Positions 1,619-54,371 of a DNA stretch of 64,000 nt are shown one piece after another. The notes beneath the pieces were generated by a model that was not told the origin of the DNA, searched no databases, and worked only from the letters and a program-made list of their open reading frames with translations. The stretch spans positions 146,209-210,208 of the IMG/VR virus record IMGVR_UViG_3300035698_022190; one strand, written 5' to 3'. Position numbers and translations under genes: made by a program. Every line of letters starts with the position of its first letter. Within the stretch, counting starts at the first letter, position 1.

Positions 1619-1973
1619 CTCTTAACTCCTTCAGCAGCATATCTGTAATGTTAATAACATCTCGTCTCTCTGCGTCTACATATATAATTTGATGTTCCAT
1701 CTCAATAATGCTCGGACAAGTGAATTGTAGTATACCAAATCCTTTGTCTACCATTTCTTCAATATCTTTGACCGAGAACCAGGATAATAGGCCAGCTTTA
1801 TCAGCTACTGCGGTTTTCCAGTTCTTGCCATCAGTTTGGTGGATTGGATCATAAGGCATTGGCAAATTAAGCAATCTGTCATCTGACAACTGCTCAAGTA
1901 CCAGTTTACCATCAATTTTTGTAGTCCACATTCCATTTGATTCATCTAAATGTTCTATTCTACACAACCTCAT
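1608..1973 (-). CDS. Hypothetical phage protein
   Basis: 121-aa ORF overlapping both neighbours in an operon. Confidence 0.7.
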   Translation of the reverse strand: MRLCRIEHLDESNGMWTTKIDGKLVLEQLSDDRLLNLPMPYDPIHQTDGKNWKTAVADKAGLLSWFSVKDIEEMVDKGFGILQFTCPSIIEMEHQIIYVDAERRDVINITDMLLKELRDDS

Positions 1974-2328
1974 CTCGTAATTCCTTATATTTACCGGCTA
2001 TTACTCCTAAGCGTTGCTTTTCAAGAGTAAAGCCATGTTCAGCAGGATTTTCTGTCATATATGTAGCTGCTAACTGCTCAGTAGCAAATACCTGAAAATC
2101 TGTATCTATTCCGTCCCAGCCCATATCAATATAGACTAACCATACTTCTTGGTGATAGGCTAATTGATGACTAGCACCAATTAATGCTACGTTTAGGCTG
2201 GATAAAGCTTTATCTTTGGCGTCTTTTAGTCTTTTATCACTCATACATTTTAAGCAAAGATCTTCAGACCACCACACTGCATTAGATATTGTACTGCTGC
2301 ATTCTCTGCAGATCTTTTCTTCTGCCAT
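1960..2328 (-). CDS. Hypothetical protein with N-terminal CxxC..CxxC; start reassigned to 2328
   Basis: AGGAGA RBS before MAEEKICREC; the longer ORF overlaps a tRNA-like gene. Confidence 0.7.
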   Translation of the reverse strand: MAEEKICRECSSTISNAVWWSEDLCLKCMSDKRLKDAKDKALSSLNVALIGASHQLAYHQEVWLVYIDMGWDGIDTDFQVFATEQLAATYMTENPAEHGFTLEKQRLGVIAGKYKELRDEVV

Positions 2329-2348
2329 TTGCGTCTCCTTTAAAATTG

Positions 2349-2414
2349 CTAAGTATGCCGGAATCGAACCGGCGTCACTCGTTTGTGAGTATATTACCCC
2401 TCTACCAATACTTA
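2349..2414 (-). tRNA. Minimal/degenerate tRNA-like RNA, no assignable anticodon
   Basis: Acceptor TAAGTAT/ATACTTA, T-arm GCCGG-TTCGATT-CCGGC, D-loop with GG; anticodon arm only ACTC-ACAAAC-GAGT; followed by CAA. Confidence 0.65.
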
Positions 2415-2462
2415 GGTTCATCTGGTCGCGAACCAGAGTCTTCTTTGACGTCAGTCAAAATT

Positions 2463-2578
2463 TTACGAGCATGCAAGTATGTGTTGGATCAGGGCACATT
2501 TAGCCGACATCCTAGGTCTCGACGTATTCTATCCGATGCACCTTGGATACATTGTATCCACGGCACTTGCGCCCGTAA
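2463..2578 (-). ncRNA. Structured RNA, unknown family
   Basis: Long closing helix TTACGGGC.GCAAGT/ACTTGC.GCTCGTAA with internal hairpins. Confidence 0.4.
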
Positions 2579-2600
2579 TAAGGCTATATTCCAAAATTTG

Positions 2601-2766
2601 TGACCAGTGGAGGATTTGAACCCCCGATTATAGAGACTAGTGAGTTTCGCTCTATTAGCCTGCTGCTTACTACGCAGCGCTACACTTGAATACCCGGCTC
2701 ACTACTATCGAATATTACCGTGCGAATGTTTTAAAGAGTCTCGCCCTCTAAAACATAAAACTGGTC
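2601..2766 (-). ncRNA. 166-nt expanded tRNA-like RNA
   Basis: Perfect acceptor GACCAGT/ACTGGTC, discriminator A then CAA; T-arm GGGGG-TTCAAAT-CCTCC; 13-bp hairpin in the D-arm position; branched interior. Confidence 0.7.
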
Positions 2767-2777
2767 ATTGCAATGTA

Positions 2778-2999
2778 TTATTTCTTCGGAGGAAGTCCAA
2801 GACTATCTTGACGCTCAAGATAATGTTCAAGGGCCTCCGTTACTACCCAGGAGAATCTTTTTGTGGTAAGACGTTTCCATCCGAATAGTCTCTTTAAAGA
2901 ATTCTTTAGAGCAGGCTCAATAGTACATTCCCACTCAACGAAGTCTCCATCGATCTCTACTTCTTTGATAATTTTAAAACTTCCTAACTTTTTCTCCAT
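2778..2999 (-). CDS. Small hypothetical protein embedded in the RNA cluster (possibly ribbon-helix-helix-like)
   Basis: AAGGA RBS; C-terminal SWVVTEALEHYLE helix. Confidence 0.6.
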   Translation of the reverse strand: MEKKLGSFKIIKEVEIDGDFVEWECTIEPALKNSLKRLFGWKRLTTKRFSWVVTEALEHYLERQDSLGLPPKK

Positions 3000-3033
3000 A
3001 TGAATATCCTTTAATTTAAAGTATTAGGAATAA

Positions 3034-3142
3034 GGCTTAACTTTTCACCGGCGACTTTCAGGATTCGAGTATGAAATGTCCCGCCCGACTTAGAGGGGCC
3101 TCCTTGCAATGATCAACCTGCACGAGCTATCTGGGTTAAGCC
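3034..3142 (-). ncRNA. 109-nt structured RNA, unknown family
   Basis: Terminal stem GGCTTAAC/GTTAAGCC, GC-rich interior, AT-rich flanks. Confidence 0.45.
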
Positions 3143-3162
3143 ATAAGTTCCTACGAAATTAA

Positions 3163-3431
3163 TTGAGACTGTCCCCGCCTGTCGGTCTTGGGTACAGTTG
3201 GACCGGCCTAGTTAGTGGCTAACTCGTAATACAGTATCGGCAATACCCCATCAGGGGTATCTGCTCTCTTCGGGTTCTCTATATAGGCTCAGTGTACAGC
3301 TATCTTCCGGACTCTGTACTCGATTACTCTATATATTTCCATCCCCGTCCTGTTAACTGAACAAAGGGGATCTGCACTAGGTTAGTATCTTACGGCCAGA
3401 TTCTGTTAGGCTACAATGCCTACAGTCTCAA
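3163..3431 (-). ncRNA. 269-nt structured RNA, unknown family
   Basis: 10-bp terminal stem TTGAGACTGT/ACAGTCTCAA and several internal helices; abuts the tRNA-Gln-like gene. Confidence 0.6.
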
Positions 3432-3436
3432 ATTTG

Positions 3437-3528
3437 ATGAATAGACAGGGTTCGAACCTGCATAGTACCGTTCAAAGCGGCGACATTTCCGAATGCACCT
3501 GCATAGTGCCATTTTATGCTACTATTCA
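3437..3528 (-). tRNA. tRNA-Gln(TTG)-like with an extra hairpin between D and anticodon arms
   Basis: Acceptor TGAATAG/CTATTCA (U1-A72); D-stem GCAT/ATGC; loop CT-TTG-AA in GCCG/CGGT; T-arm GCAGG-TTCGAAC-CCTGT; insert GCATT-CGGA-AATGT. Confidence 0.7.
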
Positions 3529-3531
3529 TTT

Positions 3532-3608
3532 TGGTATATGGGCCGCGTTGCAACCTCATGCATGCATACATGTGTATCCAAGCACAGGGACACATCCTTA
3601 CATATACC
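3532..3608 (-). ncRNA. 77-nt tRNA-His-like mimic lacking canonical D and T arms
   Basis: 8-bp terminal stem GGTATATG/CATATACC; hairpin GTGTCC-CTGTGCTT-GGATAC presenting CT-GTG. Confidence 0.4.
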
Positions 3609-3690
3609 GAGTTCGGGGCAGGCATTGAATGGACGAGTCCACTCTTACCGCCTCCACCATTCTCACCGAAGTGAAAATTTATTTGTAAAT

Positions 3691-3875
3691 TATTGTAGTG
3701 GGCAATCTGAGCTGCTCCGCTGTCACGGACACAGGCATATAATGTTCAGGGTGAATAATATACCAACAGGGTCTTATCCTATACTATGACCGACTCCCTT
3801 AATGAAACCGGCTTTTGTCCGCTGCAGAGTTAACTCGTTGCGGTTCTTGGCGGAAAATAGATTGACATTATAATA
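3691..3875. ncRNA. 185-nt structured RNA, unknown family
   Basis: Long closing helix plus TCCGCT/GGCGGA, CGGACA/TGTCCG and CTGCA/TGCGG; G-U pairs favour the plus strand. Confidence 0.4.
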
Positions 3876-3962
3876 TTGCTAGGGCACAACCCCTGCAGCT
3901 CGTACGATCGCTAGGAAGAGCGGCCTGCCGTTGGCCTATGAAGGTCCATTAATTGAATAGCG

Positions 3963-4120
3963 GACCCGCAACTGGGATCGAACCAGTGTCTCTCTTTTGA
4001 TCGGAATGACCTTTTGTGAGTTATTACATTCCTGATCCCATTTTCATGGGTGTCTCATCCTGCTCTAGTCACTAGGATAATGCTGTCGGAAGCAATTCCC
4101 AACATTTTGACTACGTGAAT
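3963..4120 (-). ncRNA. 158-nt expanded tRNA-like RNA
   Basis: T-arm ACTGG-TTCGATC-CCAGT; weak acceptor ATTCACG/TGCGGGT; D-stem TAGTCA/TGACTA with inserted hairpin. Confidence 0.55.
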
Positions 4121-4548
4121 TTTGTTTCCATATTAACATCCGTAGGTTTGTTCCTGGGCACGTATAAGTTTTACAAAATATACAGTGATTTGATGTTGCT
4201 CCTATTAGTGCGATACCTTTTACGCAAAGCGCCATGTTAATAAAACTATTCTTGATGAGATACGCTCATCTATTCTTTCTAACGTAGTAGTTGGTAGCCC
4301 GGTATACTTAATTGCTTCCAAGTTTGAAATTGTTCGCGAGGGCGGATTGATTCCCGAAGGGGTCACCGCCAACCTCCACCTCACCATACAGTCGCGTGAA
4401 CTGTACTTATGGTAAGACTTTGGATTCAAGTCGCCACCTGAATGCATGTGCTGCACTAGTTTGTTGCCAGCCAGCTTCTGCTTCTCACTTACGTTTAATA
4501 AAGGTTTTGTTCCGGTCTGTTGTTCAGTAGACATTATGGAACAGTTTT

Positions 4549-4556
4549 CTTATACC
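4549..4556 (-). promoter_or_regulatory. GGTATAAG motif heading the RNA operon (one of 17 copies, 4549-28537)
   Basis: Plus-strand CTTATACC/CTTATCCC at 4549, 6236, 6503, 7449, 7523, 8496, 15410, 18535, 20361, 20775, 21331, 23315, 24484, 27226, 27552, 27682, 28530. Confidence 0.75.
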
Positions 4557-4632
4557 AAAAAGAGCCCATAAAATTGAAAAACCCACTTCTAAGAAATGGG
4601 TGAAAGGAGGTCATTTTATGGGCCCAATAAAT

Positions 4633-4821
4633 CTAATGTTGTATAAGTTGATCCATAGTGAACTCGGTGTGGTGTTCACAGGTTCCTGCTTGTTTGCAGC
4701 TAGGGGGCAATGGAACTTTGCAATCCTTTGTAGTACATCTCAAACGACGTTTAAATTCTGCCTGTGTCATTATGTATACTATTACTTTTTCTTTCGGTTC
4801 GTTTGTAAATATATTAGTCAT
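4633..4821 (-). CDS. Small Cys-rich hypothetical protein
   Basis: 62-aa ORF with four Cys. Confidence 0.5.
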   Translation of the reverse strand: MTNIFTNEPKEKVIVYIMTQAEFKRRLRCTTKDCKVPLPPSCKQAGTCEHHTEFTMDQLIQH

Positions 4822-4843
4822 TCACTAGTGTTGATTTGTCTGT

Positions 4844-5245
4844 TTATATGTTGCTGAGAACTTGGTTACTTGACTCTGGTTGTAATAGAGTTTCTGTAAT
4901 AGGTTTATCATCAACTACGCCGACCTTGACTTTAGGGCCGGATTCTTTTAATTTTGCCTTCGAAGCTGTTTTAGTCTTCTTAGCGTCACGCTTTGTAATT
5001 AGATTGTCAAGAAAATCATTTATGTTAACTCCTTCTTTCTTTGGAGTGCCTAAAGTTTTGGCACGCCATTTATCAATAGCAGCTTGCGTGTGTAGATTTT
5101 GCGTGTCTTGACAGTTGAAACACAGCGTATCAGAAAGACCCATGGGTAGGGGTGATGTACACCCCGGTGCAATACATATATCGCGATTCTTGAACTCTGT
5201 CTGTGTCTCCACGTTAATTAATATGCGTTTTGGCTTATCGCTCAT
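4844..5245 (-). CDS. Hypothetical protein with N-terminal zinc finger
   Basis: CIAPGC..CFNC; AGGA RBS. Confidence 0.65.
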   Translation of the reverse strand: MSDKPKRILINVETQTEFKNRDICIAPGCTSPLPMGLSDTLCFNCQDTQNLHTQAAIDKWRAKTLGTPKKEGVNINDFLDNLITKRDAKKTKTASKAKLKESGPKVKVGVVDDKPITETLLQPESSNQVLSNI

Positions 5246-6111: not shown

Positions 6112-6517
6112 AATACTTAAATATAATAATATCAGTATATTCAGATTAAAATTCCAAGATTAGTGTCTAAATAGTATACATTAAATTGTATACTAAGTAA
6201 ACAGTGACGAATTTTAACGAGATTAGTGCGTACTTCTTATACCGGAAAGTGTAAAAAAATTGGCGTGTAATAACAAGTATTACTAATGGCTTATCTTGTA
6301 TCAGCCCTCTTACTCTAGTCGTTACCTCATAATAATAAGAACCCCTTCTTATTAATTAAAGTAATATAGCTCCTGTATTAAGGGAATTATATGACTGGAA
6401 AGATTGTTCTCCTTCGTGGAAAACAAGTCTAGTTGTTCTTCGTGTTTATCATCCAAGACGCCACCTGATAATTTTGAAGGTCGTTAACCTTCTTGCACAA
6501 TTCTTATACCAGAATAC

Positions 6518-7156
6518 CTACTTTTTACGCTTTTTTGAGGGCTTAGAGGTGTTGAAGACTTTTTTCCACCAATTATTGGCGTATCCCCGTCTTCTGTGGA
6601 AGGGCGTGGGTCCCACTGTGTTGAGGAGCTTCTTGTCATGAGCCCTGATTAACCCTTTACTAAAGTTGGGCGCAAAATCAGGGTAAAGTGCGGCAAAGCC
6701 ATGAAACAGGGCATCAGCGGTTACTTTAGCATGAATTGATGCTGCCCATACCCAAGCATCTCCACCGGTTATGCTTTTTACGCTGAAATTGGGGTGAAAT
6801 TCGCTAGAAAAGGGTTTAGCTAAGGATTCATCAGCATGAAGCTCTATTTTGCCCGTACGAAGCCGCCTAGGCAGGGATTGAATAATTCTACGTACTGCTT
6901 CAGCTGCAGCCTGATTACGAGCGCGATATACCCCGAATCGCTCAATATCTGAGGGCATTGCTAAAGAAATTACATAATGACCTATTTGAGTAAGGCTATT
7001 AAATAATTCTACTCTAGCTGCTGAGTTGATAGCCTTTGAGTCTCTGATGTTTGATGGAAGTGTGGTGCGAGTTGGACGAAGGATATATGCCGCACATACA
7101 CAGGGGCCTGCCATAGATGGGCTATAGTTTGCTTCATCGAGTCCTATAATTACCAT
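6518..7156 (-). CDS. rnhB: Ribonuclease HII
   Basis: IIGLDEA..AGP, RDSK, AASIHAKV, GPTPFHRR motifs. Confidence 0.85.
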   Translation of the reverse strand: MVIIGLDEANYSPSMAGPCVCAAYILRPTRTTLPSNIRDSKAINSAARVELFNSLTQIGHYVISLAMPSDIERFGVYRARNQAAAEAVRRIIQSLPRRLRTGKIELHADESLAKPFSSEFHPNFSVKSITGGDAWVWAASIHAKVTADALFHGFAALYPDFAPNFSKGLIRAHDKKLLNTVGPTPFHRRRGYANNWWKKVFNTSKPSKKRKK

Positions 7157-11209: not shown

Positions 11210-13390
11210 ATGAATAACTTATTTCTAGACAATGTTGAGTTTGAAAAGATCGGGGAGCTGATATACTTAGACAAAGATTCAACTAAGTGGATTAAAACAA
11301 TAGTAGGTGCATTCTTGGAACAATACCCAATGATGCAAGACTTGCCTATTACCCTTTCTTGGAAAAAGAAAGATACTAATAAGGGTTACGGCGTTGGTAC
11401 ACTAAACATAGCAGGAGCACAGGTTCCCGTTATTGCAAACCAATGGCAGGTATCACCTTTTGATATCATTCTTGTTTCTGGACAAACATATCCATTAAAC
11501 ACAGACATCTTACAAACTTTAATGACTGAGGCTTCACCTTTTAAAGGTGTTGCTGGGTCTGGAAAGAAACAATCTATGGCTATCTTTGGAGAACAGCTAC
11601 AGATTTCACCACAAGATGTAGGACAAACACCTATTAAATATGCGTCAGCCAATTCTTTTATTGATGCGATAGAAAATGTAGATAAGCAGGCCGTTATAAA
11701 TATTCTTAGAACTGTACAAGATAATCCTACAATTAAGCAAGGCTTTGTTGATAATGACACATATGACATAATTGAGAAAATAGCTACAAAGAAGGTAACT
11801 GACTTACAATCAACGGTGGACACATTTACTCGTGGATTAGAGATGGATCGCCAATTTGTAGCCTCAGATGCTTATGGCAATAAAATTTTAAAGCAAGCTA
11901 ATTCAGCAGTGGATGTGACATGGGATACATCCATTACTCCAGCCGAGGGTGAAACTTATGAATTGAAAACAGCTACACTACCAGAGATTGAAGATGTTAA
12001 GGTTAAAAAACCTGTCGCTATCTTTGGAACGGATACAGACACAGTCTTGCATATATATGAAGACAGATCATGGGAAATAAAAGAAGCAGAATTAAATGAA
12101 GAGCTGGAGAGTACACTTGAAAGTGATCAGCCACACACCGGTGACTTCGGAGTTTGGGCACTACATAATAAGGTAACTGCTCCTTTTGAGGTTTCTCGTA
12201 TTTACAAAACAGCTGAAGTTGATGCTGTAAATAAATATCATATTACAGATTCAGATGACTCTCTATATTTAACAAAAGAGGGTGAATGGTTCAGAACACA
12301 GGAAGAGCGCGAACAGCCACTAACATCTAATTTTGAAGCTGAAGGTGTCGACCCCAAAGTTCATGACTTTGGTGTATGGATCACTAACGATAATGTTACT
12401 GAGCCTTTTGAAATAGTTTCAATGGAAAAGATTGCTGAAATTGGTCAGTGGGAAATCACCGGACATTCAGGTCTAAAGATGACACGTTACTATCCCATTC
12501 GTACCAAGTCGGAAGAATTAGTAGAGAAAGAAAAAAATGCATACTACGTACCAGGAAATGCTAAATTTGTCAAACTAGGTGCTCAGGTAACTGAGGCTGA
12601 TACTGCAGATGTATATAAACAAGCAGCGGAACTAGCAGCTGAAACTAGCGCTGTGTGTATTGAAGGAACAGCTGATTTTCGCAAAGTTTCTTATTATCTT
12701 GAAAAAGATTGTGAGAATAAATCCTTTGTGAATCATCAAATGTATCTGGATGCAAAAGTCGTACCTGAAAAGGCAAGGTTCATTAAATTAGGCGAAAAAG
12801 CCACATATAAATTGCCCAATAGAATAAAAGAAAATGTACACAATATCCATAAAGATTCTGCAGGGCTATACAGATTAAGTGGTAGAGAGTTTGATAAATA
12901 TGCAGATAAACACGAAACTCGTGATCTGAACCATGATAGTGCTTTTTGGGCAATGGTTCACTGTGGAGTAGCCAAAGAAGATCTTCGTAAAATAGCATCA
13001 ATGCACAATGGAGAGACTATTGCGTTGATATCTAACCCAAAAGCTCCATTATCTGTAAAAGATGTGGTTGGCGCAGTAGAACGCAATTATGAAAAGCATG
13101 CAGAAACTATTGGTAAGCTAAAGATCAATTTAGTGAAGGAAGCTTCTGTGTTAAATAATAAAGGTAGTGTAGATGCTGTATTATCTTTAGGATTACTAAA
13201 GAAAAGTAATGCATTAGAATATTCTAACCTTGTACCTCAATATGAGAGTGTAATGTCAGATATGGCAAAATTACTATTAGCCACACGTCTGGGAATGCAG
13301 CAAGTTCCAGAGGAAGCAGTAAAGACGGCTATGTTATCTCTAGCTGATGTAGTGGCGGTATTAAAACAAATTGGAGCCGTAAATAAATAA
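11210..13390 (+). CDS. Large putative head/virion protein with many K-x-A motifs and an internal repeat
   Basis: EKIG, KYAS, EKIA, KTAE, KQAA, KIAS, KEAS; duplicated DFGVW..VT.PFE module. Confidence 0.65.
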   Translation: MNNLFLDNVEFEKIGELIYLDKDSTKWIKTIVGAFLEQYPMMQDLPITLSWKKKDTNKGYGVGTLNIAGAQVPVIANQWQVSPFDIILVSGQTYPLNTDILQTLMTEASPFKGVAGSGKKQSMAIFGEQLQISPQDVGQTPIKYASANSFIDAIENVDKQAVINILRTVQDNPTIKQGFVDNDTYDIIEKIATKKVTDLQSTVDTFTRGLEMDRQFVASDAYGNKILKQANSAVDVTWDTSITPAEGETYELKTATLPEIEDVKVKKPVAIFGTDTDTVLHIYEDRSWEIKEAELNEELESTLESDQPHTGDFGVWALHNKVTAPFEVSRIYKTAEVDAVNKYHITDSDDSLYLTKEGEWFRTQEEREQPLTSNFEAEGVDPKVHDFGVWITNDNVTEPFEIVSMEKIAEIGQWEITGHSGLKMTRYYPIRTKSEELVEKEKNAYYVPGNAKFVKLGAQVTEADTADVYKQAAELAAETSAVCIEGTADFRKVSYYLEKDCENKSFVNHQMYLDAKVVPEKARFIKLGEKATYKLPNRIKENVHNIHKDSAGLYRLSGREFDKYADKHETRDLNHDSAFWAMVHCGVAKEDLRKIASMHNGETIALISNPKAPLSVKDVVGAVERNYEKHAETIGKLKINLVKEASVLNNKGSVDAVLSLGLLKKSNALEYSNLVPQYESVMSDMAKLLLATRLGMQQVPEEAVKTAMLSLADVVAVLKQIGAVNK

Positions 13391-32773: not shown

Positions 32774-34936
32774 ATGAGTTTTAATTTAAATAAAGTTGAG
32801 TATAAAGACCATTTAAAAGGGTTTTGAGCGGGCAATTTAATAGCTAATTGGAAAGCGTTGCCGAGCGAGTTCAAGAAATTTGAGCCACCATTTTTTACCA
32901 CAAAGGATGATATACTGTTTCCCTATAACTGGCAAGTGAACTGGAAAGCTGACGACGACAATGATATTGAGTATATGTATTTACACTTAATGAATAAACA
33001 TAAAACATTGCAGCTGTCAGCAAATCAAATTCGAGATGGATGATTAGAACATATAAACGATGATTATTTGTGGGTTGCCAATCAGCGTGCTTATGATTTA
33101 ATGAAAACAGGCATGGTTCCCCCAAGCACAGGAATGGCGTGTAATAATGAGTTTTCTGACAAGATTGATGCCCAAATAGAGTGTGAAATCTTTGGTGTAT
33201 TTTATCCCGATGAGCCACACAAGGCATTAAATATAGCAGATTTGCCAATTAGAACAGTTGGCGAAGGTATTGCTTATCACGCCTCAAGAGTTTATGTGGC
33301 GATGTATTCTTTAGCTTTAAACAGTCAATCGCCATTAGAGTTGTTAGATAAAGCAATCCAATATGGGAATGATAAAACAAGTGAGATTTATAATTCAATA
33401 AGAGTAAGTTTCAAAAATAGTTATACTTGGGAAGAAGCGAGAGATTTCTTTTATGAAGAATATCAAAAGAACAACTCTGACTACGATTGGGCGTTAGATG
33501 CTGAGATTAATTTTGGTGCTGTTCTAATTGCTCTGTTATGGGGTGAAATGGATTACAAAAAGACTGTGATGATTGGTACTCTTGCAGGATGGGATTCAGA
33601 TTGTAATGCAGTTACAGCAGGGTCATTGGTTGGATATGTAAAAGGATTCAAACATCTTGAACAGGTTTTTGGTAGAAAGATTTATACTAATTATAATATA
33701 GCAAGAACTCGTAAGAATATGCCTGATTATTTACCTAATGTAAGTGGCGCTGAAGATACTTTTGAGTTCATGGCAGATAGAATGATTAATTTTATGACAA
33801 TAGATAATGGAGATAAAATGAAAAAAGTAATATTTTGTATTGGAGACAGTAGAACTGCTGCAGGACACAGTCCTTGGTACACACCAGCTCCCGATAGTTA
33901 TCCTTTTTTCTTACAGCAAGAAATGGGGAATGGGTATGATGTTAGACAGTGGGGACAAGGTGGCACTTCTGTAACTAAGGGAGTCCATTGGAGTATCTGG
34001 GATGGTTTTGAAGGTAACCCGGCTTTGTCTTTTCAGCATTTAAAAAATGTTCAGCAAATAGAGAGTTTCTGGGATAAAGCTTTTCCTGGAATGCCTTTTA
34101 ATGAAACTGAGATAATTAACATCGTCAATTATGGTACTAATGATGCGATGAATAATAGATGGCCTACAACTAAAGCGAACTTTAAAAGGGATTACAAAGC
34201 ATTAACTTGGCTACTAAAAGGTAAAACATACCTTTGTTTACCACAGCCAACTTTTGGTACAGGTGAAGACCATGTTTATAACTCGTCAATTTTAGAAGTG
34301 CACGCATTAATAAATGAGCTTTCCAAAGAAACAGGATGCCCCACAATAGACTTTTATACAGGTACAACAGCTAGTATGTCGCCTGTTGATGGGCTACATT
34401 TCGGAGCATTAGGCAATATGCACTTTGCTAATGCAGCAAGTAAAGAATTAAAAAATGACTCACCAATAATACCACCAATAATCGGAGAACCTATGGAAAC
34501 ACCAATAATTAAAATTGAAAATAATAAACTATCCGTAACTAATTTTGATCCAACTGTTACAAATTATAGCTGGCAGTATAGTAAAACATTGCATGGTTAT
34601 GATGAATGGCTTGGTTTTGGAACAGAAATGGACATTAAGCCGAGATTCCAAATAGATGGACATTATTTCTTTTGTTACGCAAGAGATAATACCACTGATG
34701 GTAGAACACCTGATTCTAAGAGGGTGATATATAAATCAGGCGCCCCGGCCCCAATATGCGGATGCACAGATTCGGAAGCAACAAATTATAATCCAAACGC
34801 CACAGAAGATGACGGCACATGCATATACTCTAACCCCACCAATAATGATAAAGTTGTTTTAGAGATGCGAGCACATCTTTTAACTGCTACAAATGCATTA
34901 ACTGCCATTGAAGACTTATTTGATGATATTGAGTAA
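32774..34936 (+). CDS. ADP-ribosylglycohydrolase fused to SGNH/GDSL hydrolase (2 TGA=Trp)
   Basis: GF*AG..IANW, ADDDNDIEY, IRDG*L, GWDSDCN; IGDS, YGTNDA, DGLH; GCTD..A.NYNP.AT.DDG.C repeat. Confidence 0.8.
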
Positions 34937-51470: not shown

Positions 51471-54371
51471 ATGATTGAAAAAACCCTAAATTATATTTAC
51501 GGTGATAATGACACGGAAGTCTTCTCTGTTATGGATAATAACATGGAGAAGCGCGCGTCGTACTCATCAGAGGTTCAAGACTATCTTGATAAGTTAGCTG
51601 AGTCTCCCGATAAGACGTATGCGCTCGTAAACGCATTGTCAGCAGGTGAATATTATGGGTCTAATCGTAATGGTGACTACTTCCCCGAAAAGGCACTAAA
51701 AGATTATCACAAAACATTTGAAGCTTTAGGGCATGTATATACCCACCATGTAAATAAAGATCCAAAGAAATCCTTAGGTTCAGTAAAATTTGCTCATTAT
51801 AATCCAACTATGAAAAGGGTTGAACTGGTTCTAGAATTAGATAATGCTAAAGCTAAGCCAGTTATTGAGCGCCTTGATAAAGGGGAACTGCCAGCAGTCA
51901 GTATGGGTTGCTTTCAAGCTGGTGTAAATATTATACTTAGCGATTTTTCAAAAAAACCCATTGAGGATATTCAAGTTGGCGACGAAGTACTAACACATAC
52001 AGGGGAAATACATAAAGTAACTGAATTGCATCCAAGAGATTATGCGGGAATAATGTATACTATTAATCCTGTGGGTAAATATAGGCCTTCAATTACGGCG
52101 ACCAAAGAGCATCCGTGGCTTGTAATTGAGCCAGACAAGTTTTTTGAAAAAGACGAAAAAGCTCGATTAAGACGAAGAAAAAAACTTTCGTTAGCTGACG
52201 CTGTATGAAAAGTATCTGAAGATTTATCTACACAAGACCACCTTTTAATTCCAAAACCTAAGAACGCGGACGTGATTGACATGCCTGTAGCAAAGGCTAA
52301 GCTTTTAGGGTGGTATTTAGCAGAAGGCCACACACATATTAAAGATAATGGAGTTGAATTTACGGTAAACAGGGCAGACCAAATAGTTAAAGATATAGAC
52401 TCTGTTTTAAAAACCTTAGGCTTACCAGAAACAGTAGTTATGGCACATAATGTTTCTAAAGAAGCTTTACGGCTAATAGTTTTCTCTGCAGATTTAAAAA
52501 AAGATGTTTTATATTATTGTGGAAAGTATAGTCATAAAAAAAGATTACATAGAAAAGTTTTTTATTGGAGTGATGAAGCTAAATTAGCATTTCTAGGTGC
52601 GTATATTTCTGGAGATGGTTTTTTTCACGAAAATCAAGCATATATTAGTTCTTGTAATCGTGAACTTTTAGAACAAATTCAGTGGCTTGGTTTTTCTTTA
52701 GGAATAAACTCAACACTTGGAAAAAATGAACACAAAGCAGGAAATGGTTTTTCTTTTGAAGATACAACAGAGTATATTTTAAGGTTTAGAGGAACACATA
52801 ATAGTATACTATCTAAGTATGCTGAAAAAATTTCAACTGTAAATAAGCAAGCAGTTGGTGGCAAAGGTGGACCTTTTGAATATGAAAATTTTTATCTTTT
52901 AGCCATTGAAGAAATAAAAGGAAATGAATATACAGGTCCTGTATATAATTTTGAAGTAGATGTAGATAATTCTTATGTGGTAGAACAATATGCAGTACAT
53001 AACTGTAGAGTTCCAAAAGATACATGTAGTATATGTGGAAACGAAGCAACAAAAATCGCAAATTATTGCGAACATTTAAAAAACAACATGAACAAAGTAA
53101 TGCCAAATGGTAAAAAGGTTTATGCTATAAATAACCAACCGAAGTTTTTTGACATTAGTGTAGTAACAATCCCAGCCGAAAAGACAGCTAGTTTTATTAA
53201 AAGAATATCTAGTAAAATTAAAGCATCTTTTGCCAAATCAGCAAATGAAATAGATGTCCCATTAACGTGGGCGCAAAGCATTGCAAAAACAGCATCGCTG
53301 GAAACACAAGCAGATATTAAAAAGAAAATAGACGTAAAATTAGATGCGGTTTCTGAAGACCCAAAGAAGTTAATCTTACTGTCACAAAAAAGGTTATCTA
53401 AAGAAACTATTGAAAAGCTATCTGAACATCCATTGGGCGAAGTATTGTCCACTTTAATTGGTTTACGAATAGTACCCGTTAAAGAAGATTTTCAAAAATT
53501 AGCTTTATATAGTATGGGGAAAGCAGAGGGTGCGGAAGAGTTAGCTGAAGCAAAAGTATGTTTTGAAGTTAATCCTAAATTACGTCCTATAATACCTGCA
53601 GACGTTTCTCTTGATTATTTTAATGAAAAAATTGCCGGGTTGTTAATAGAGGATTTGCCTGGAATGGCTTTAACAAAGCCTAATATAATCTCACGCAGCT
53701 TTTATAAAGCAGCACAAGTGGGATTTACAGAGCCAATCGCTACATCGGAGGAATTAAATCAGGCTTTTCCTGAAAAATCCAAACGTGAACGGAGCATGAT
53801 TAGCAAAGTTTTCTTTGGCCAACAAGAAGATCCAAAACTTAATTCTGTTAAAAGCCCAATAATTCCTTTAGGAGTATTGGGTAGTCTATATTACGGGTAT
53901 ATAAAAACATTTAACAATGTTAATACAGGAGAGTTTAAGAAGTTTTTAGCGCGACATCCATGAGTATTTACAGCTATGTTAGGTACCGCAGCCGGTGCGT
54001 CTATATTAGCTCAGAAGCGCGCTCACGGAATACATGCTTTAGATAAGCAGGCAGGATTAGTAGAGAATGCGGGACACGTGATAGGTGGTTTACTTATTAC
54101 AGTTCCAGGTTCTTATTATGCTGCTTCGTTCCCAGAACAAAAAGCACAGCAGGGGATTCCAATCTCATCTAGTCAGAATTTTTTGAGAAAACATCCCGCA
54201 CTTGTTGCTTTAGGCGCGTCCATTCTTGGCGTAACCGGAATTGGAACAGTGACTAAACAAATGAATAAATTAAAAACTTTGAATTCTAACTGACTTAAGT
54301 TTGCCAGCGTTCTAAATCGTTTAGACGAGGAAGCTTTAAATGTTATTTATAAGGATTTAATCATAAACTAA
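51471..54371 (+). CDS. Prohead maturation protease with intein and long C-terminal extension (3 TGA=Trp)
   Basis: NRNGDYFP, HHVN.D, VSMG|C, CSICG, FFDISVV.IPA; upstream of scaffold and capsid. Confidence 0.75.
51909..53003 (+). mobile_element. Intein with LAGLIDADG endonuclease in the prohead protease
   Basis: SMG|CFQAG..PIEDIQVGD.VLTH..T.EHP; LGWYLAEG, LGAYISGDG; VYNFEV..SYVV...VHN|C. Confidence 0.9.

What the first reader, a model, noticed from the sequence alone, without database searches (positions are those of the whole stretch)
3434..3528. tRNA-Gln(UUG) with an extra arm 5' of the anticodon stem
Seen: all four canonical arms are present, plus a GCATT-CGGA-AATGT hairpin between the D-arm and anticodon arm. 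Known: extra arms normally sit 3' of the anticodon stem. Inference: a novel architecture, a mini-intron, or a shield against anticodon nucleases.
Basis: partly seen in the sequence, partly recalled or inferred. Interest (0 to 1): 0.6.

Follow-up and report, generated by a model that had tools for sequence, protein, structure and literature searches.

The report
Rearranged phage tRNA-Gln gene with insertion
A 210-kb salt-lake bacteriophage carries, besides its normal tRNA set, a second glutamine-tRNA-like gene interrupted by a 15-17-base insertion where the D arm meets the anticodon arm; the sequence is real and tRNA-derived, but it is most likely a rearranged, non-decoding copy rather than a proven new tRNA architecture.

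Summary
On the minus strand (window 3438-3528) lie a perfect 7-bp acceptor stem, a D arm, an anticodon arm with loop CUUUGAA (UUG, Gln), a 4-nt variable loop and a canonical T arm. A 15-17-nt insert sits at the D/anticodon junction. Standard detectors reject the intact sequence. Deleting the insert in silico gives ARAGORN tRNA-Gln(UUG) at 115.9, within the range of the phage's genuine tRNAs; shuffled and random controls give nothing.

The "extra arm" itself is weak: -0.9 kcal/mol, matched by 17-28% of random 17-mers. The gene carries a 17-nt internal direct repeat (15/17, p about 4e-4), which points to a rearrangement. A canonical tRNA-Gln(UUG) sits in the main cluster.

The candidate lies in a GC-rich, non-coding island that varies between strains and holds at least three other aberrant tRNA-like genes. 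No orthologue and no RNA data were found, so function is untested. A distant relative carries other tRNA-framed genes with 18-57-nt insertions.

Best reading: a rearranged tRNA paralogue, end-processed like a tRNA but not decoding. It may be a young pseudogene or a tRNA-like decoy. The class II, BHB-intron and group I readings are rejected.

The parts
3438..3528 (-). tRNA-like gene body (91 nt): a tRNA-Gln(UUG) frame plus the insert
   Evidence: Sequence. ARAGORN calls tRNA-Gln(ttg) after in-silico removal of the insert.
3522..3528 (-). Acceptor stem, 5' strand (TGAATAG)
   Evidence: Pairs 7 of 7 with 3438-3444. Found by the frame scan.
3501..3519 (-). D arm (GCAT / 11-nt loop with GG / ATGC)
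3483..3499 (-). 17-nt insert between positions 26 and 27. It can equally be read as a 15-nt insert (3482-3496) after a U27-A43 pair. It contains the weak hairpin GCATT-CGGA-AATGT (3483-3496).
   Evidence: Deletion scan; hairpin energy and controls.
3466..3482 (-). Anticodon arm, loop CTTTGAA, anticodon TTG at 3473-3475
   Evidence: (-mt reading).
3445..3461 (-). T arm GCAGG-TTCGAAC-CCTGT
3438..3444 (-). Acceptor stem, 3' strand (CTATTCA)
3434..3437 (-). Discriminator T plus CAA tail. This is the same 3' signature as 11 of 25 of the genome's Rfam tRNA hits.
3497..3513 (-). Internal direct repeat, copy 1 (AATGGCACTATGCAGGT): D loop, D stem 3' strand and the first 3 nt of the insert
   Evidence: the repeat finder family D5; local alignment 15/17, shuffle p about 4e-4.
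3456..3472 (-). Internal direct repeat, copy 2 (AACGGTACTATGCAGGT): anticodon stem 3' strand, variable loop and T stem 5' strand
2349..2414 (-). Neighbouring aberrant tRNA-like gene #2 (66 nt, 6-nt 'anticodon' loop, G-CAA tail)
   Evidence: Rfam tRNA 41.6 bits; ARAGORN only at -ps80.
2421..2437 (-). Isolated T-arm-like hairpin TCTGG-TTCGCGA-CCAGA just 5' of #2
2602..2766 (-). Neighbouring tRNA-framed RNA #4 (165 nt): 7-8-bp acceptor-like stem plus T arm enclosing four hairpins, A-CAA tail
   Evidence: Frame scan; MFE -56.8 kcal/mol, z -4.62.
3964..4051 (-). Neighbouring degenerate tRNA-like element #3. Its T arm (3971-3987) and the adjoining 3' part resemble #2; it has an imperfect acceptor.
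   Evidence: the repeat finder families D1/D2; sequence; T-arm scan.
3000..4100 (-). GC-rich (44-50%) non-coding stretch that embeds the candidate
   Evidence: No ORF cover under any stop read-through; GC profile; flanks fold with z -2.1 and -2.7.

Best explanation
This is a rearranged paralogue of the phage's own tRNA family. It is an otherwise canonical tRNA-Gln(UUG)-type gene that acquired a 15-17-nt insertion at the junction of the D stem and the anticodon stem, through an internal duplication or recombination event that left a 17-nt direct repeat.

The acceptor/T-arm minihelix, the elbow nucleotides and the N73-CAA tail are intact. If transcribed, it should therefore still be cut out by RNase P and 3' processing and receive CCA (inferred). 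The insert breaks the continuous D/anticodon coaxial stack at the hinge. That is the region contacted by 23S rRNA helix 69 in ribosome-bound tRNA (my recollection of ribosome structures, not tested here). The phage already has a normal tRNA-Gln(UUG). The candidate therefore most likely does not decode. I take it to be a young pseudo-tRNA in a strain-variable island of aberrant tRNA-like genes.

Shown: the anatomy, the redundancy, the repeat, the context and the strain variability. Inferred: processing, lack of decoding, and pseudogene status.
For: - Removing 15-17 nt restores tRNA-Gln(ttg) at ARAGORN 115.9; the intact sequence fails ARAGORN and Rfam; controls give 0 of 120.
- A 17-nt internal direct repeat (15/17, p about 4e-4) is present; none of the 26 genuine tRNAs has a comparable one.
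- The insert hairpin is no more stable than chance.
- A canonical tRNA-Gln(ttg) lies at genome 98145-98218. The set is otherwise near complete, including Asp, Glu and Met; the only Tyr(gta) call is ARAGORN's second-lowest score and only 74 nt.
- The nearest paralogues are the genome's own Thr(cgt) and ARAGORN 'Tyr(gta)' tRNAs.
- At least three further non-canonical tRNA-like elements and a T-arm remnant lie within 1.7 kb on the same strand. Truncated or degenerate tRNA hits also occur in the main cluster.
- A roughly 96%-identical variant strain loses homology exactly at the 3' end of element #2, so the island is dispensable or variable.
- The CAA tail is shared with genuine tRNA genes.
Against: - Every stem is intact, and the universal core nucleotides are nearly all present (U8, A14, GG, U33, A37, G53, TTC, A58, C61; position 21 is T rather than A). 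An old pseudogene would show point decay as well, so the event is recent or the gene is under selection.
- The island is GC-rich and structured, and contains a 165-nt tRNA-framed RNA with z -4.6. A second such RNA lies in the main cluster (z -4.0).
- A distant relative (G002/G003) carries five tRNA-framed genes with 18-57-nt insertions. This hints that insertion-bearing tRNA frames may be a maintained feature of the lineage.
- No expression or population data were available to test decay.
Confidence: 0.45

Rival explanations
1. It is a functional but non-decoding tRNA-like RNA. It would be one of a lineage-typical set of tRNA-framed RNAs carrying extra hairpins. It would be processed and stabilised through the tRNA frame, and would act as a decoy or sponge for tRNA-targeting host defences or toxins, or as a processing punctuation mark between small genes.
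For: - Minihelix, elbow and CAA tail are intact.
- The neighbouring RNA #4 and genome 97778-97955 are strongly structured tRNA-framed RNAs (z -4.62 and -3.99).
- The elements alternate with small ORFs on the same strand.
- Relatives G002/G003 carry five insertion-bearing tRNA frames.
- Phage tRNAs are known to counter tRNA-targeting defences (PMC10264068, PMC11555353).
Against: - There is no conservation of this element anywhere.
- The island is absent or replaced in a 96%-identical strain.
- The hairpin is at chance stability.
- No expression data exist.
- The odd elements share no common insert or position.
Confidence: 0.28
2. It is a genuine decoding tRNA-Gln(UUG) with a tolerated fifth arm that emerges at the hinge, opposite the site where class II variable arms emerge. 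This would be a new tRNA architecture.
For: - All four arms and the core tertiary nucleotides are canonical.
- The anticodon loop CUUUGAA is ideal, and there is a U1-A72 pair as in bacterial tRNA-Gln (the identity rule is from my own knowledge).
- The score after removing the insert is in the upper part of the genome's tRNA range.
Against: - It is redundant with a canonical Gln(UUG).
- The insert sits in the D/anticodon stack, which contacts the ribosome (general knowledge, not tested).
- The weak hairpin is not distinguishable from chance.
- The internal repeat suggests an accident rather than design.
- No orthologues were found.
Confidence: 0.1
3. The insert is a mini-intron that is excised and the halves ligated by an unknown phage or host activity, giving a normal 74-76-nt tRNA.
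For: - ARAGORN -i accepts an intron model, though as Asp(gtc) with a 9-nt intron at 104.2.
- Relatives G002/G003 have tRNA genes with 18-57-nt insertions in or beside the anticodon loop. Their removal gives scores up to 125.
Against: - No bulge-helix-bulge can be drawn here (by inspection) or in the 112-nt relative.
- The position is 26/27, not 37/38.
- 15-17 nt is too short for group I, and Rfam finds no intron family.
- The lineage is bacterial by its 93-nt class II tRNA-Tyr, a PHROG DNA-polymerase hit (phrog_17) and Shine-Dalgarno use.
- The genome already has Asp(GTC) and Gln(UUG).
Confidence: 0.07
4. It is a degenerate class II tRNA: the first hairpin is the anticodon arm (CGG, UCGG or GGA) and the CUUUGAA hairpin is a long variable arm.
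For: - ARAGORN at -ps80 reports tRNA-?(tcgg) with this layout.
- The 38 nt between the D arm and the T arm fit class II lengths.
Against: - It needs an 8-nt loop and a stem of one G-C pair, three G.U pairs and a mismatch, at -11.2 versus -17.5 kcal/mol.
- It is below the default threshold.
- Deletion variants with these anticodons score 100-109, against 115.9 for Gln.
- The second hairpin has a perfect 7-nt U33/A37 loop at exactly the class I distance from the T arm.
Confidence: 0.03

Closest known systems
Pseudo-tRNAs / degenerate tRNA genes in large phage tRNA clusters
   Same: It is tRNA-derived, rejected by standard detectors, redundant with a canonical isoacceptor, and accompanied by truncated or aberrant siblings in the same genome.
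   Different: There are no point defects. The single lesion is a clean 15-17-nt insertion at position 26/27, and it lies outside the main cluster in a separate GC-rich island.
Class II tRNAs (Leu, Ser, bacterial Tyr) with a long variable arm
   Same: A fifth helix emerges at the hinge between the D/anticodon stack and the T arm, and the overall length is similar.
   Different: The extra segment is on the 5' strand (26/27), not at 44-48. The hairpin is only marginally stable. The anticodon is Gln, a class I family.
Archaeal/eukaryal tRNA introns at non-canonical positions (bulge-helix-bulge; Thermoproteales, Cyanidioschyzon) - from my own knowledge
   Same: A short insertion lies outside position 37/38, and its removal restores a canonical tRNA.
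   Different: No BHB motif is present, the phage lineage is bacterial, and no splicing endonuclease is known in that context.
Phage T4 stable RNAs species 1 and 2 (rnaC/rnaD) in the tRNA cluster - from my own knowledge, not checked here
   Same: These are phage RNAs of unknown function encoded among tRNA genes and processed with them. This is the nearest analogue for the tRNA-framed RNAs #4 and genome 97778-97955.
   Different: No sequence relation was tested. The candidate itself is much closer to a real tRNA.
Phage tRNAs that evade tRNA-targeting defences (PMC10264068; PMC11555353)
   Same: They are phage-encoded tRNA copies that are redundant with respect to decoding.
   Different: Known evasion works through anticodon-loop substitutions. 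Here the loop is canonical and the change is an insertion outside it.
Rfam SpF41 sRNA (RF02435), a tRNA-shaped Streptococcus sRNA
   Same: The neighbouring element #2 aligns to its tRNA-like part at 26.9 bits: acceptor, a short central hairpin and a T arm.
   Different: The score is far below the gathering score of 52, there is no terminator part, and the candidate itself does not match.

Membership tests
tRNA (Rfam RF00005 / ARAGORN) | Scores above the curated threshold as an intact sequence | tested here: not met
   No hit at the gathering score or at E<=10 in 8 kb. Only a 15.9-bit local T-arm hit when searched in 2 kb. ARAGORN default finds none.
tRNA (Rfam RF00005 / ARAGORN) | Cloverleaf with canonical arm spacing once the insert is ignored | tested here: met
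   Deleting 15-17 nt gives tRNA-Gln(ttg), 115.9. Controls give 0 of 120.
tRNA (Rfam RF00005 / ARAGORN) | Conserved core nucleotides (U8, A14, G18G19, U33, R37, G53, T54-T55-C56, A58, C61) | tested here: met
   Read directly from the sequence. Position 21 is T rather than A.
tRNA (functional decoder) | Transcribed, processed, aminoacylated and used on the ribosome | not testable with these tools
   No RNA run holds the locus. Only DNA contigs could be laid.
Class II tRNA | Long arm between the anticodon stem and the T stem (positions 44-48), with a 7-nt anticodon loop in the preceding arm | tested here: not met
   That reading needs an 8-nt loop and a G.U-rich stem. It passes only at -ps80 and costs -11.2 versus -17.5 kcal/mol.
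BHB-intron tRNA (archaeal/eukaryal type) | Two 3-nt bulges separated by a 4-bp helix at the exon-intron borders | tested here: not met
   By inspection of 3466-3519, the only exon-intron 4-bp pairing (ATGC with GCAT) involves the 5' end of the insert and leaves no bulges. The 112-nt relative likewise shows none.
BHB-intron tRNA (archaeal/eukaryal type) | Host of a domain that has the tRNA splicing endonuclease | tested here: inconclusive
   The host is unknown. The lineage looks bacterial: a 93-nt class II tRNA-Tyr in relative G001, PHROG phage hits including a DNA polymerase (phrog_17), and a Shine-Dalgarno motif before the ORF at 2328.
Group I intron-containing tRNA | Intron of about 200 nt or more with a group I core, usually in the anticodon loop | tested here: not met
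   The insert is 15-17 nt and lies outside the loop. There is no Rfam intron hit at E<=10.
tmRNA | tRNA-like domain plus a tag reading frame | tested here: not met
   ARAGORN finds no tmRNA.
Anticodon-nuclease-evading phage tRNA | Anticodon-loop differences from the host isoacceptor at the cleavage site | not testable with these tools
   The host is unknown. The loop CUUUGAA is fully canonical.

The most novel reading that the evidence does not exclude
A lineage of large bacteriophages with a fused beta/beta' RNA polymerase and sense-read TGA maintains tRNA-framed RNAs that carry 15-60-nt insertions at varied sites, and these are functional. Either an unknown bacterial or phage cut-and-join activity removes the inserts, or the RNAs act as five-armed tRNA mimics. 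On this reading the candidate would be a working tRNA-Gln-shaped member with an arm at position 26/27, an architecture not described for any tRNA.
Probability: 0.12. Interest if true: 0.8.

Novelty: new variant of a known kind. Interest (0 to 1): 0.38.

Why it matters
If the insert-bearing RNA were made and used, it would show one of two things. Either the tRNA hinge can carry an extra arm on its 5' strand, or bacteria or phages have a way to remove short tRNA inserts. Either would be new tRNA biology.

As it stands, the locus is mainly useful as a caution and a lead. Standard tRNA finders miss it. It marks a strain-variable island of tRNA-shaped RNAs in an unusual phage that also seems to read TGA as sense. 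Such islands are cheap to test by small-RNA sequencing of the source lakes or of a cultured relative.

Tried and rejected
Orthologue searches all came back empty:
- blastn of 2200-4900 against GenBank phages, and tblastn of neighbouring proteins.
- Exact and degenerate DNA patterns in IMG/VR.
- A flexible acceptor/T-loop pattern in JGI metagenomes, which returned only unrelated Ser/Asn tRNAs and one unrelated odd tRNA-like sequence.
- Neighbour-protein scans of IMG/VR.
- Protein word searches and cluster look-ups, which found singletons only.

Public reads: 15 DNA runs (13 salt-lake, 2 marine metagenomes) hold part of the locus and none is recorded as RNA. The contigs laid were identical, so they gave no variation or joint information.

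Relatives found through the RNA polymerase have no orthologue of the candidate and no insert at position 26/27.

Readings rejected:
- Coding region under read-through of any of the three stop codons.
- Known large ncRNA, ribozyme or intron families.
- tmRNA.
- Class II reading.
- Asp(GTC) with a 9-nt intron: it scores lower (104-111), and a canonical Asp gene exists.
- Archaeal host, based on ARAGORN's 74-nt 'Tyr(gta)': the call is ARAGORN's second-lowest score, shares its acceptor with Thr(cgt), and has an ambiguous loop register.

The thermodynamic z-score of the candidate is not significant (-0.37). I treat this as uninformative for a tRNA.

The MAFFT alignment of #2 with #3 did not give a clean register. 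The relation between them rests on the repeat finder families D1/D2.

Full report
**Where the window lies**

The window is the last 64 kb of a 210,208-bp linear IMG/VR virus record. PHROG and Pfam hits show it is a tailed bacteriophage. They include tail sheath, ribonucleotide reductase, primase, a DNA polymerase (phrog_17), helicases and a multisubunit RNA polymerase.

Public runs that hold the locus are salt-lake and marine metagenomes, all recorded as DNA. Logan contigs of two runs cover the candidate with no difference, so the sequence is not an artefact of one assembly.

**The observation**

The element is on the minus strand. From 5' to 3' it reads:
- acceptor strand TGAATAG (3522-3528);
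- TA;
- D arm GCAT / 11-nt loop with GG / ATGC (3501-3519);
- A26;
- a 17-nt insert (3483-3499) whose last 14 nt can form GCATT-CGGA-AATGT;
- anticodon arm (3466-3482) with the 7-nt loop CTTTGAA and anticodon TTG;
- variable loop CTAT;
- T arm GCAGG-TTCGAAC-CCTGT (3445-3461);
- acceptor strand CTATTCA (3438-3444);
- discriminator T, then CAA.

The universal core nucleotides are nearly all present (position 21 is T rather than A).

**How detectors see it**

ARAGORN at default settings finds nothing in the window. Rfam's tRNA model finds nothing here at the gathering score or at E<=10, and only a 15.9-bit T-arm fragment when 2 kb is searched.

With relaxed settings ARAGORN gives three conflicting readings:
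- Asp(gtc) with a 9-nt intron;
- an 8-nt-loop '(tcgg)' tRNA whose second hairpin is taken as a variable arm;
- in mitochondrial mode, Gln(ttg).

I therefore deleted every segment of 0-25 nt at every position and re-ran ARAGORN at default thresholds. Of 351 variants that gave a call, 188 were Gln(ttg). The best score, 115.9, removes 15 nt (3482-3496), which lets U27 pair with A43. Removing the 17 nt also gives Gln(ttg). The 26 genuine tRNAs of this genome score 100.8-120.8, and the canonical Gln scores 114.5. Alternative anticodons reach 100-111. The same scan on 60 shuffles and 60 random genomic 107-mers gave no call at all.

The tRNA-Gln(UUG)-plus-insert parse is thus solid.

**Is the insert an 'arm'?**

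Only weakly. On its own it folds at -0.9 kcal/mol. 28% of its shuffles and 17% of random 17-mers from the genome fold as well. It adds about 2 kcal/mol to the cloverleaf, which at -17.5 lies 4 kcal/mol above the MFE of -21.6.

More telling is a 17-nt direct repeat inside the gene. AATGGCACTATGCAGGT (3497-3513) covers the D loop, the D stem 3' strand and the first three insert bases. AACGGTACTATGCAGGT (3456-3472) covers the anticodon stem 3' strand, the variable loop and the T stem 5' strand. They match at 15 of 17 positions, 41 nt apart. Only 0.04% of shuffles reach this score, and none of the 26 genuine tRNAs has anything comparable.

The rest of the insert also loosely resembles the T loop and T stem 3' strand (TCG..AA..TGTC). 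This is my reading, not a statistical result. The candidate's D loop and T arm resemble the phage's own Thr(cgt) and 'Tyr(gta)' genes.

I read this as the trace of an internal duplication or recombination among the phage's tRNA genes, not an evolved arm. The exact event cannot be reconstructed.

**Redundancy**

The main tRNA cluster (genome 97-107.6 kb) holds a canonical tRNA-Gln(ttg). It also holds Asp(GTC), Glu(UUC) and Met(CAT) genes that one or other detector missed. The candidate adds no decoding capacity.

**Context**

The candidate is not alone. All of the following lie on the same strand within about 1.7 kb:
- #2 at 2349-2414: 66 nt, Rfam tRNA 41.6 bits, but with a 6-nt loop and a shortened centre.
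- An isolated T-arm hairpin at 2421-2437.
- #4 at 2602-2766: a perfect 7-bp acceptor-like stem and T arm enclosing four hairpins, MFE -56.8, z -4.62.
- #3 at 3964-4051: its T arm and the adjoining 3' part resemble #2 (81% over 26 nt), with a degenerate acceptor and a longer centre.

None of these becomes a tRNA by any single deletion.

The stretch 2400-4300 has almost no ORF cover under the standard code or with any stop read through. It is 44-50% GC against about 37% around it. The flanks of the candidate fold with z -2.1 and -2.7. No Rfam family matches it.

The candidate, #2 and #4 all end with N73-CAA. Of the genome's 25 Rfam tRNA hits, which include #2, 11 have CAA there and 23 have C74. 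These elements therefore share the 3' context of real tRNA genes.

A second long tRNA-framed RNA lies in the main cluster (genome 97778-97955, z -3.99). It is unrelated in sequence to #4. The main cluster also holds truncated tRNA hits and orphan T arms.

**Strain variability**

Short contigs from three sources carry a roughly 96%-identical variant of the genes downstream of #2. They lose all similarity exactly at the 3' end of #2 (window 2347/2348). The replacing sequence is not found anywhere in this genome. The protein at 4844-5245 has no variant in 5.8 billion proteins. The island is therefore variable within the population. This fits either dispensable relics or accessory functions.

**Relatives**

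No orthologue of the candidate was found.

Through the RNA polymerase I reached relatives. P0005 is 69% identical to this phage's RNA polymerase, but no DNA could be fetched for its contig. The IMG/VR records G001 to G010 were found with P0005 as the query and match it at 28-58%.

G001 has a 93-nt class II tRNA-Tyr. That is the bacterial type (established knowledge), so the lineage infects bacteria.

G002 and G003 are identical in their tRNA region. They carry five tRNA-framed genes with insertions of 18-57 nt, in or beside the anticodon loop or in the D arm. Removing an insert raises the ARAGORN score as high as 125. One of them has an 18-nt palindromic hairpin 5' of the anticodon. None is related to the candidate, none has an insert at 26/27, and the 112-nt one shows no bulge-helix-bulge. 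G007 shows only ordinary lengths.

Insertion-bearing tRNA frames thus recur in at least two members of this phage group. That keeps a functional reading alive, but it does not show function.

**What it most likely is**

I commit to a rearranged tRNA-Gln(UUG) paralogue that no longer decodes (0.45).

Shown: the anatomy, the repeat, the redundancy, the aberrant siblings and the strain variability.

Inferred: processing by RNase P and CCA addition (from the intact minihelix and tail), and loss of decoding. The insert interrupts the D/anticodon coaxial stack at the hinge. From published ribosome structures as I recall them, that is where 23S helix 69 contacts bound tRNA.

Against a long-dead pseudogene: there are no point defects, so the event is recent or selection persists.

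The rivals are:
- a maintained, non-decoding tRNA-like RNA such as a decoy or processing module (0.28);
- a true five-armed decoder (0.10);
- an excised mini-intron (0.07);
- a class II tRNA (0.03).

**Comparison with known kinds**

It works like, and is best filed beside, the pseudo-tRNAs and tRNA-like stable RNAs of phage tRNA clusters. It fails the formal tRNA thresholds when intact, and fails the defining features of class II tRNAs, BHB introns, group I introns and tmRNA (see the membership table). Known phage strategies against tRNA-targeting defences act through anticodon-loop substitutions (PMC10264068; PMC11555353). Here the loop is canonical.

**Limits**

No RNA data and no orthologues were available, and the host is unknown. 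The read-laying run could use contigs only. TGA=W was named only as a test, after the genome itself showed an in-frame TGA aligned with Trp in a conserved gene together with a tRNA(UCA).

Noticed in passing
window 2602-2766 (-): A 165-nt RNA-like element starts right after the stop of ORF 2778-2999. It has a 7-8-bp acceptor-like stem and a canonical T arm enclosing four hairpins, one of which is a 5-bp/7-nt anticodon-like arm. MFE is -56.8 kcal/mol, z -4.62, with an A-CAA tail like real tRNA genes. It matches no Rfam family.
   Followed up: partly
L034:17778-17955 (-) = genome 97778-97955: A second long tRNA-framed RNA (178 nt; 8-bp closing stem plus T arm, six internal hairpins, z -3.99) lies inside the main tRNA cluster. 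It has no sequence similarity to the element at window 2602-2766.
   Followed up: partly
window 2349-2414 (-) and 2421-2437 (-): A 66-nt tRNA-like gene (Rfam tRNA 41.6 bits) has a 6-nt 'anticodon' loop and a shortened centre. It aligns weakly (26.9 bits) to the tRNA-shaped Streptococcus sRNA SpF41. An orphan T-arm hairpin lies directly 5' of it.
   Followed up: partly
window 3964-4051 (-): A degenerate tRNA-like element. Its T arm and the adjoining 3' part resemble the 2349-2414 element (81% over 26 nt); it has an imperfect acceptor stem and a longer centre.
   Followed up: partly
window 2347/2348; loci L038-L040: A roughly 96%-identical variant strain (ENA, JGI and Logan contigs) loses all homology exactly at the 3' end of the tRNA-like gene at 2349-2414. 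The replacing sequence is absent from this genome. All three contigs end within 90 nt of this point.
   Followed up: partly
L034:4018-9465 (+), TGA at L034:7732-7734; tRNA at L033:5786-5883 (+): The RNA polymerase beta/beta' gene is one reading frame with a single in-frame TGA. That TGA aligns with Trp in a 69%-identical fused homologue (P0005). The genome and its relatives (L066, L067) encode a 95-100-nt tRNA with anticodon UCA and a long variable arm. TGA therefore seems to be read as sense at least here, although 26 of 105 long ORFs appear to end in TGA.
   Followed up: partly
L062:689-779, 6360-6478, 6550-6657, 6662-6775, 12888-13016 (relative G003; identical in G002): Five tRNA-framed genes carry 18-57-nt insertions in or beside the anticodon loop or in the D arm. 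One has an 18-nt palindromic hairpin 5' of the anticodon. Removing an insert gives ARAGORN scores up to 125.
   Followed up: partly
window 3000-4100: This GC-rich (44-50%) stretch has no ORF under any stop read-through. The candidate's flanks fold with z -2.1 and -2.7, including a 10-bp long-range helix closing about 270 nt just 3' of the candidate. It may encode further unrecognised RNA.
   Followed up: partly
genome 101337-101410 (-), in L035: ARAGORN's 74-nt 'tRNA-Tyr(gta)' is its second-lowest score (101.3). It shares its acceptor stem with Thr(cgt) and has an ambiguous loop register, so UGU (Thr) is possible. The genome may lack a tRNA-Tyr.
   Followed up: no
window 4633-4821, 4844-5245 and 1960-2328 (-): Small ORFs flanking the tRNA-like island share a CxxC...CxxC zinc-ribbon-like N-terminus; two of them look like paralogues. 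They match no family and have no relatives in the protein collections.
   Followed up: partly
window 52272-53963 (+) and 33068-34936 (+): A LAGLIDADG homing-endonuclease-like ORF, and a fusion of ADP-ribosylglycohydrolase with a GDSL lipase/acylhydrolase domain.
   Followed up: no
L044:6148-6229 (-) and L046:5289-5370 (+) (unrelated metagenome contigs): An 82-nt tRNA-shaped sequence with a good acceptor stem and T arm that ARAGORN does not call. It was picked up by the pattern scan and is unrelated to the candidate.
   Followed up: no
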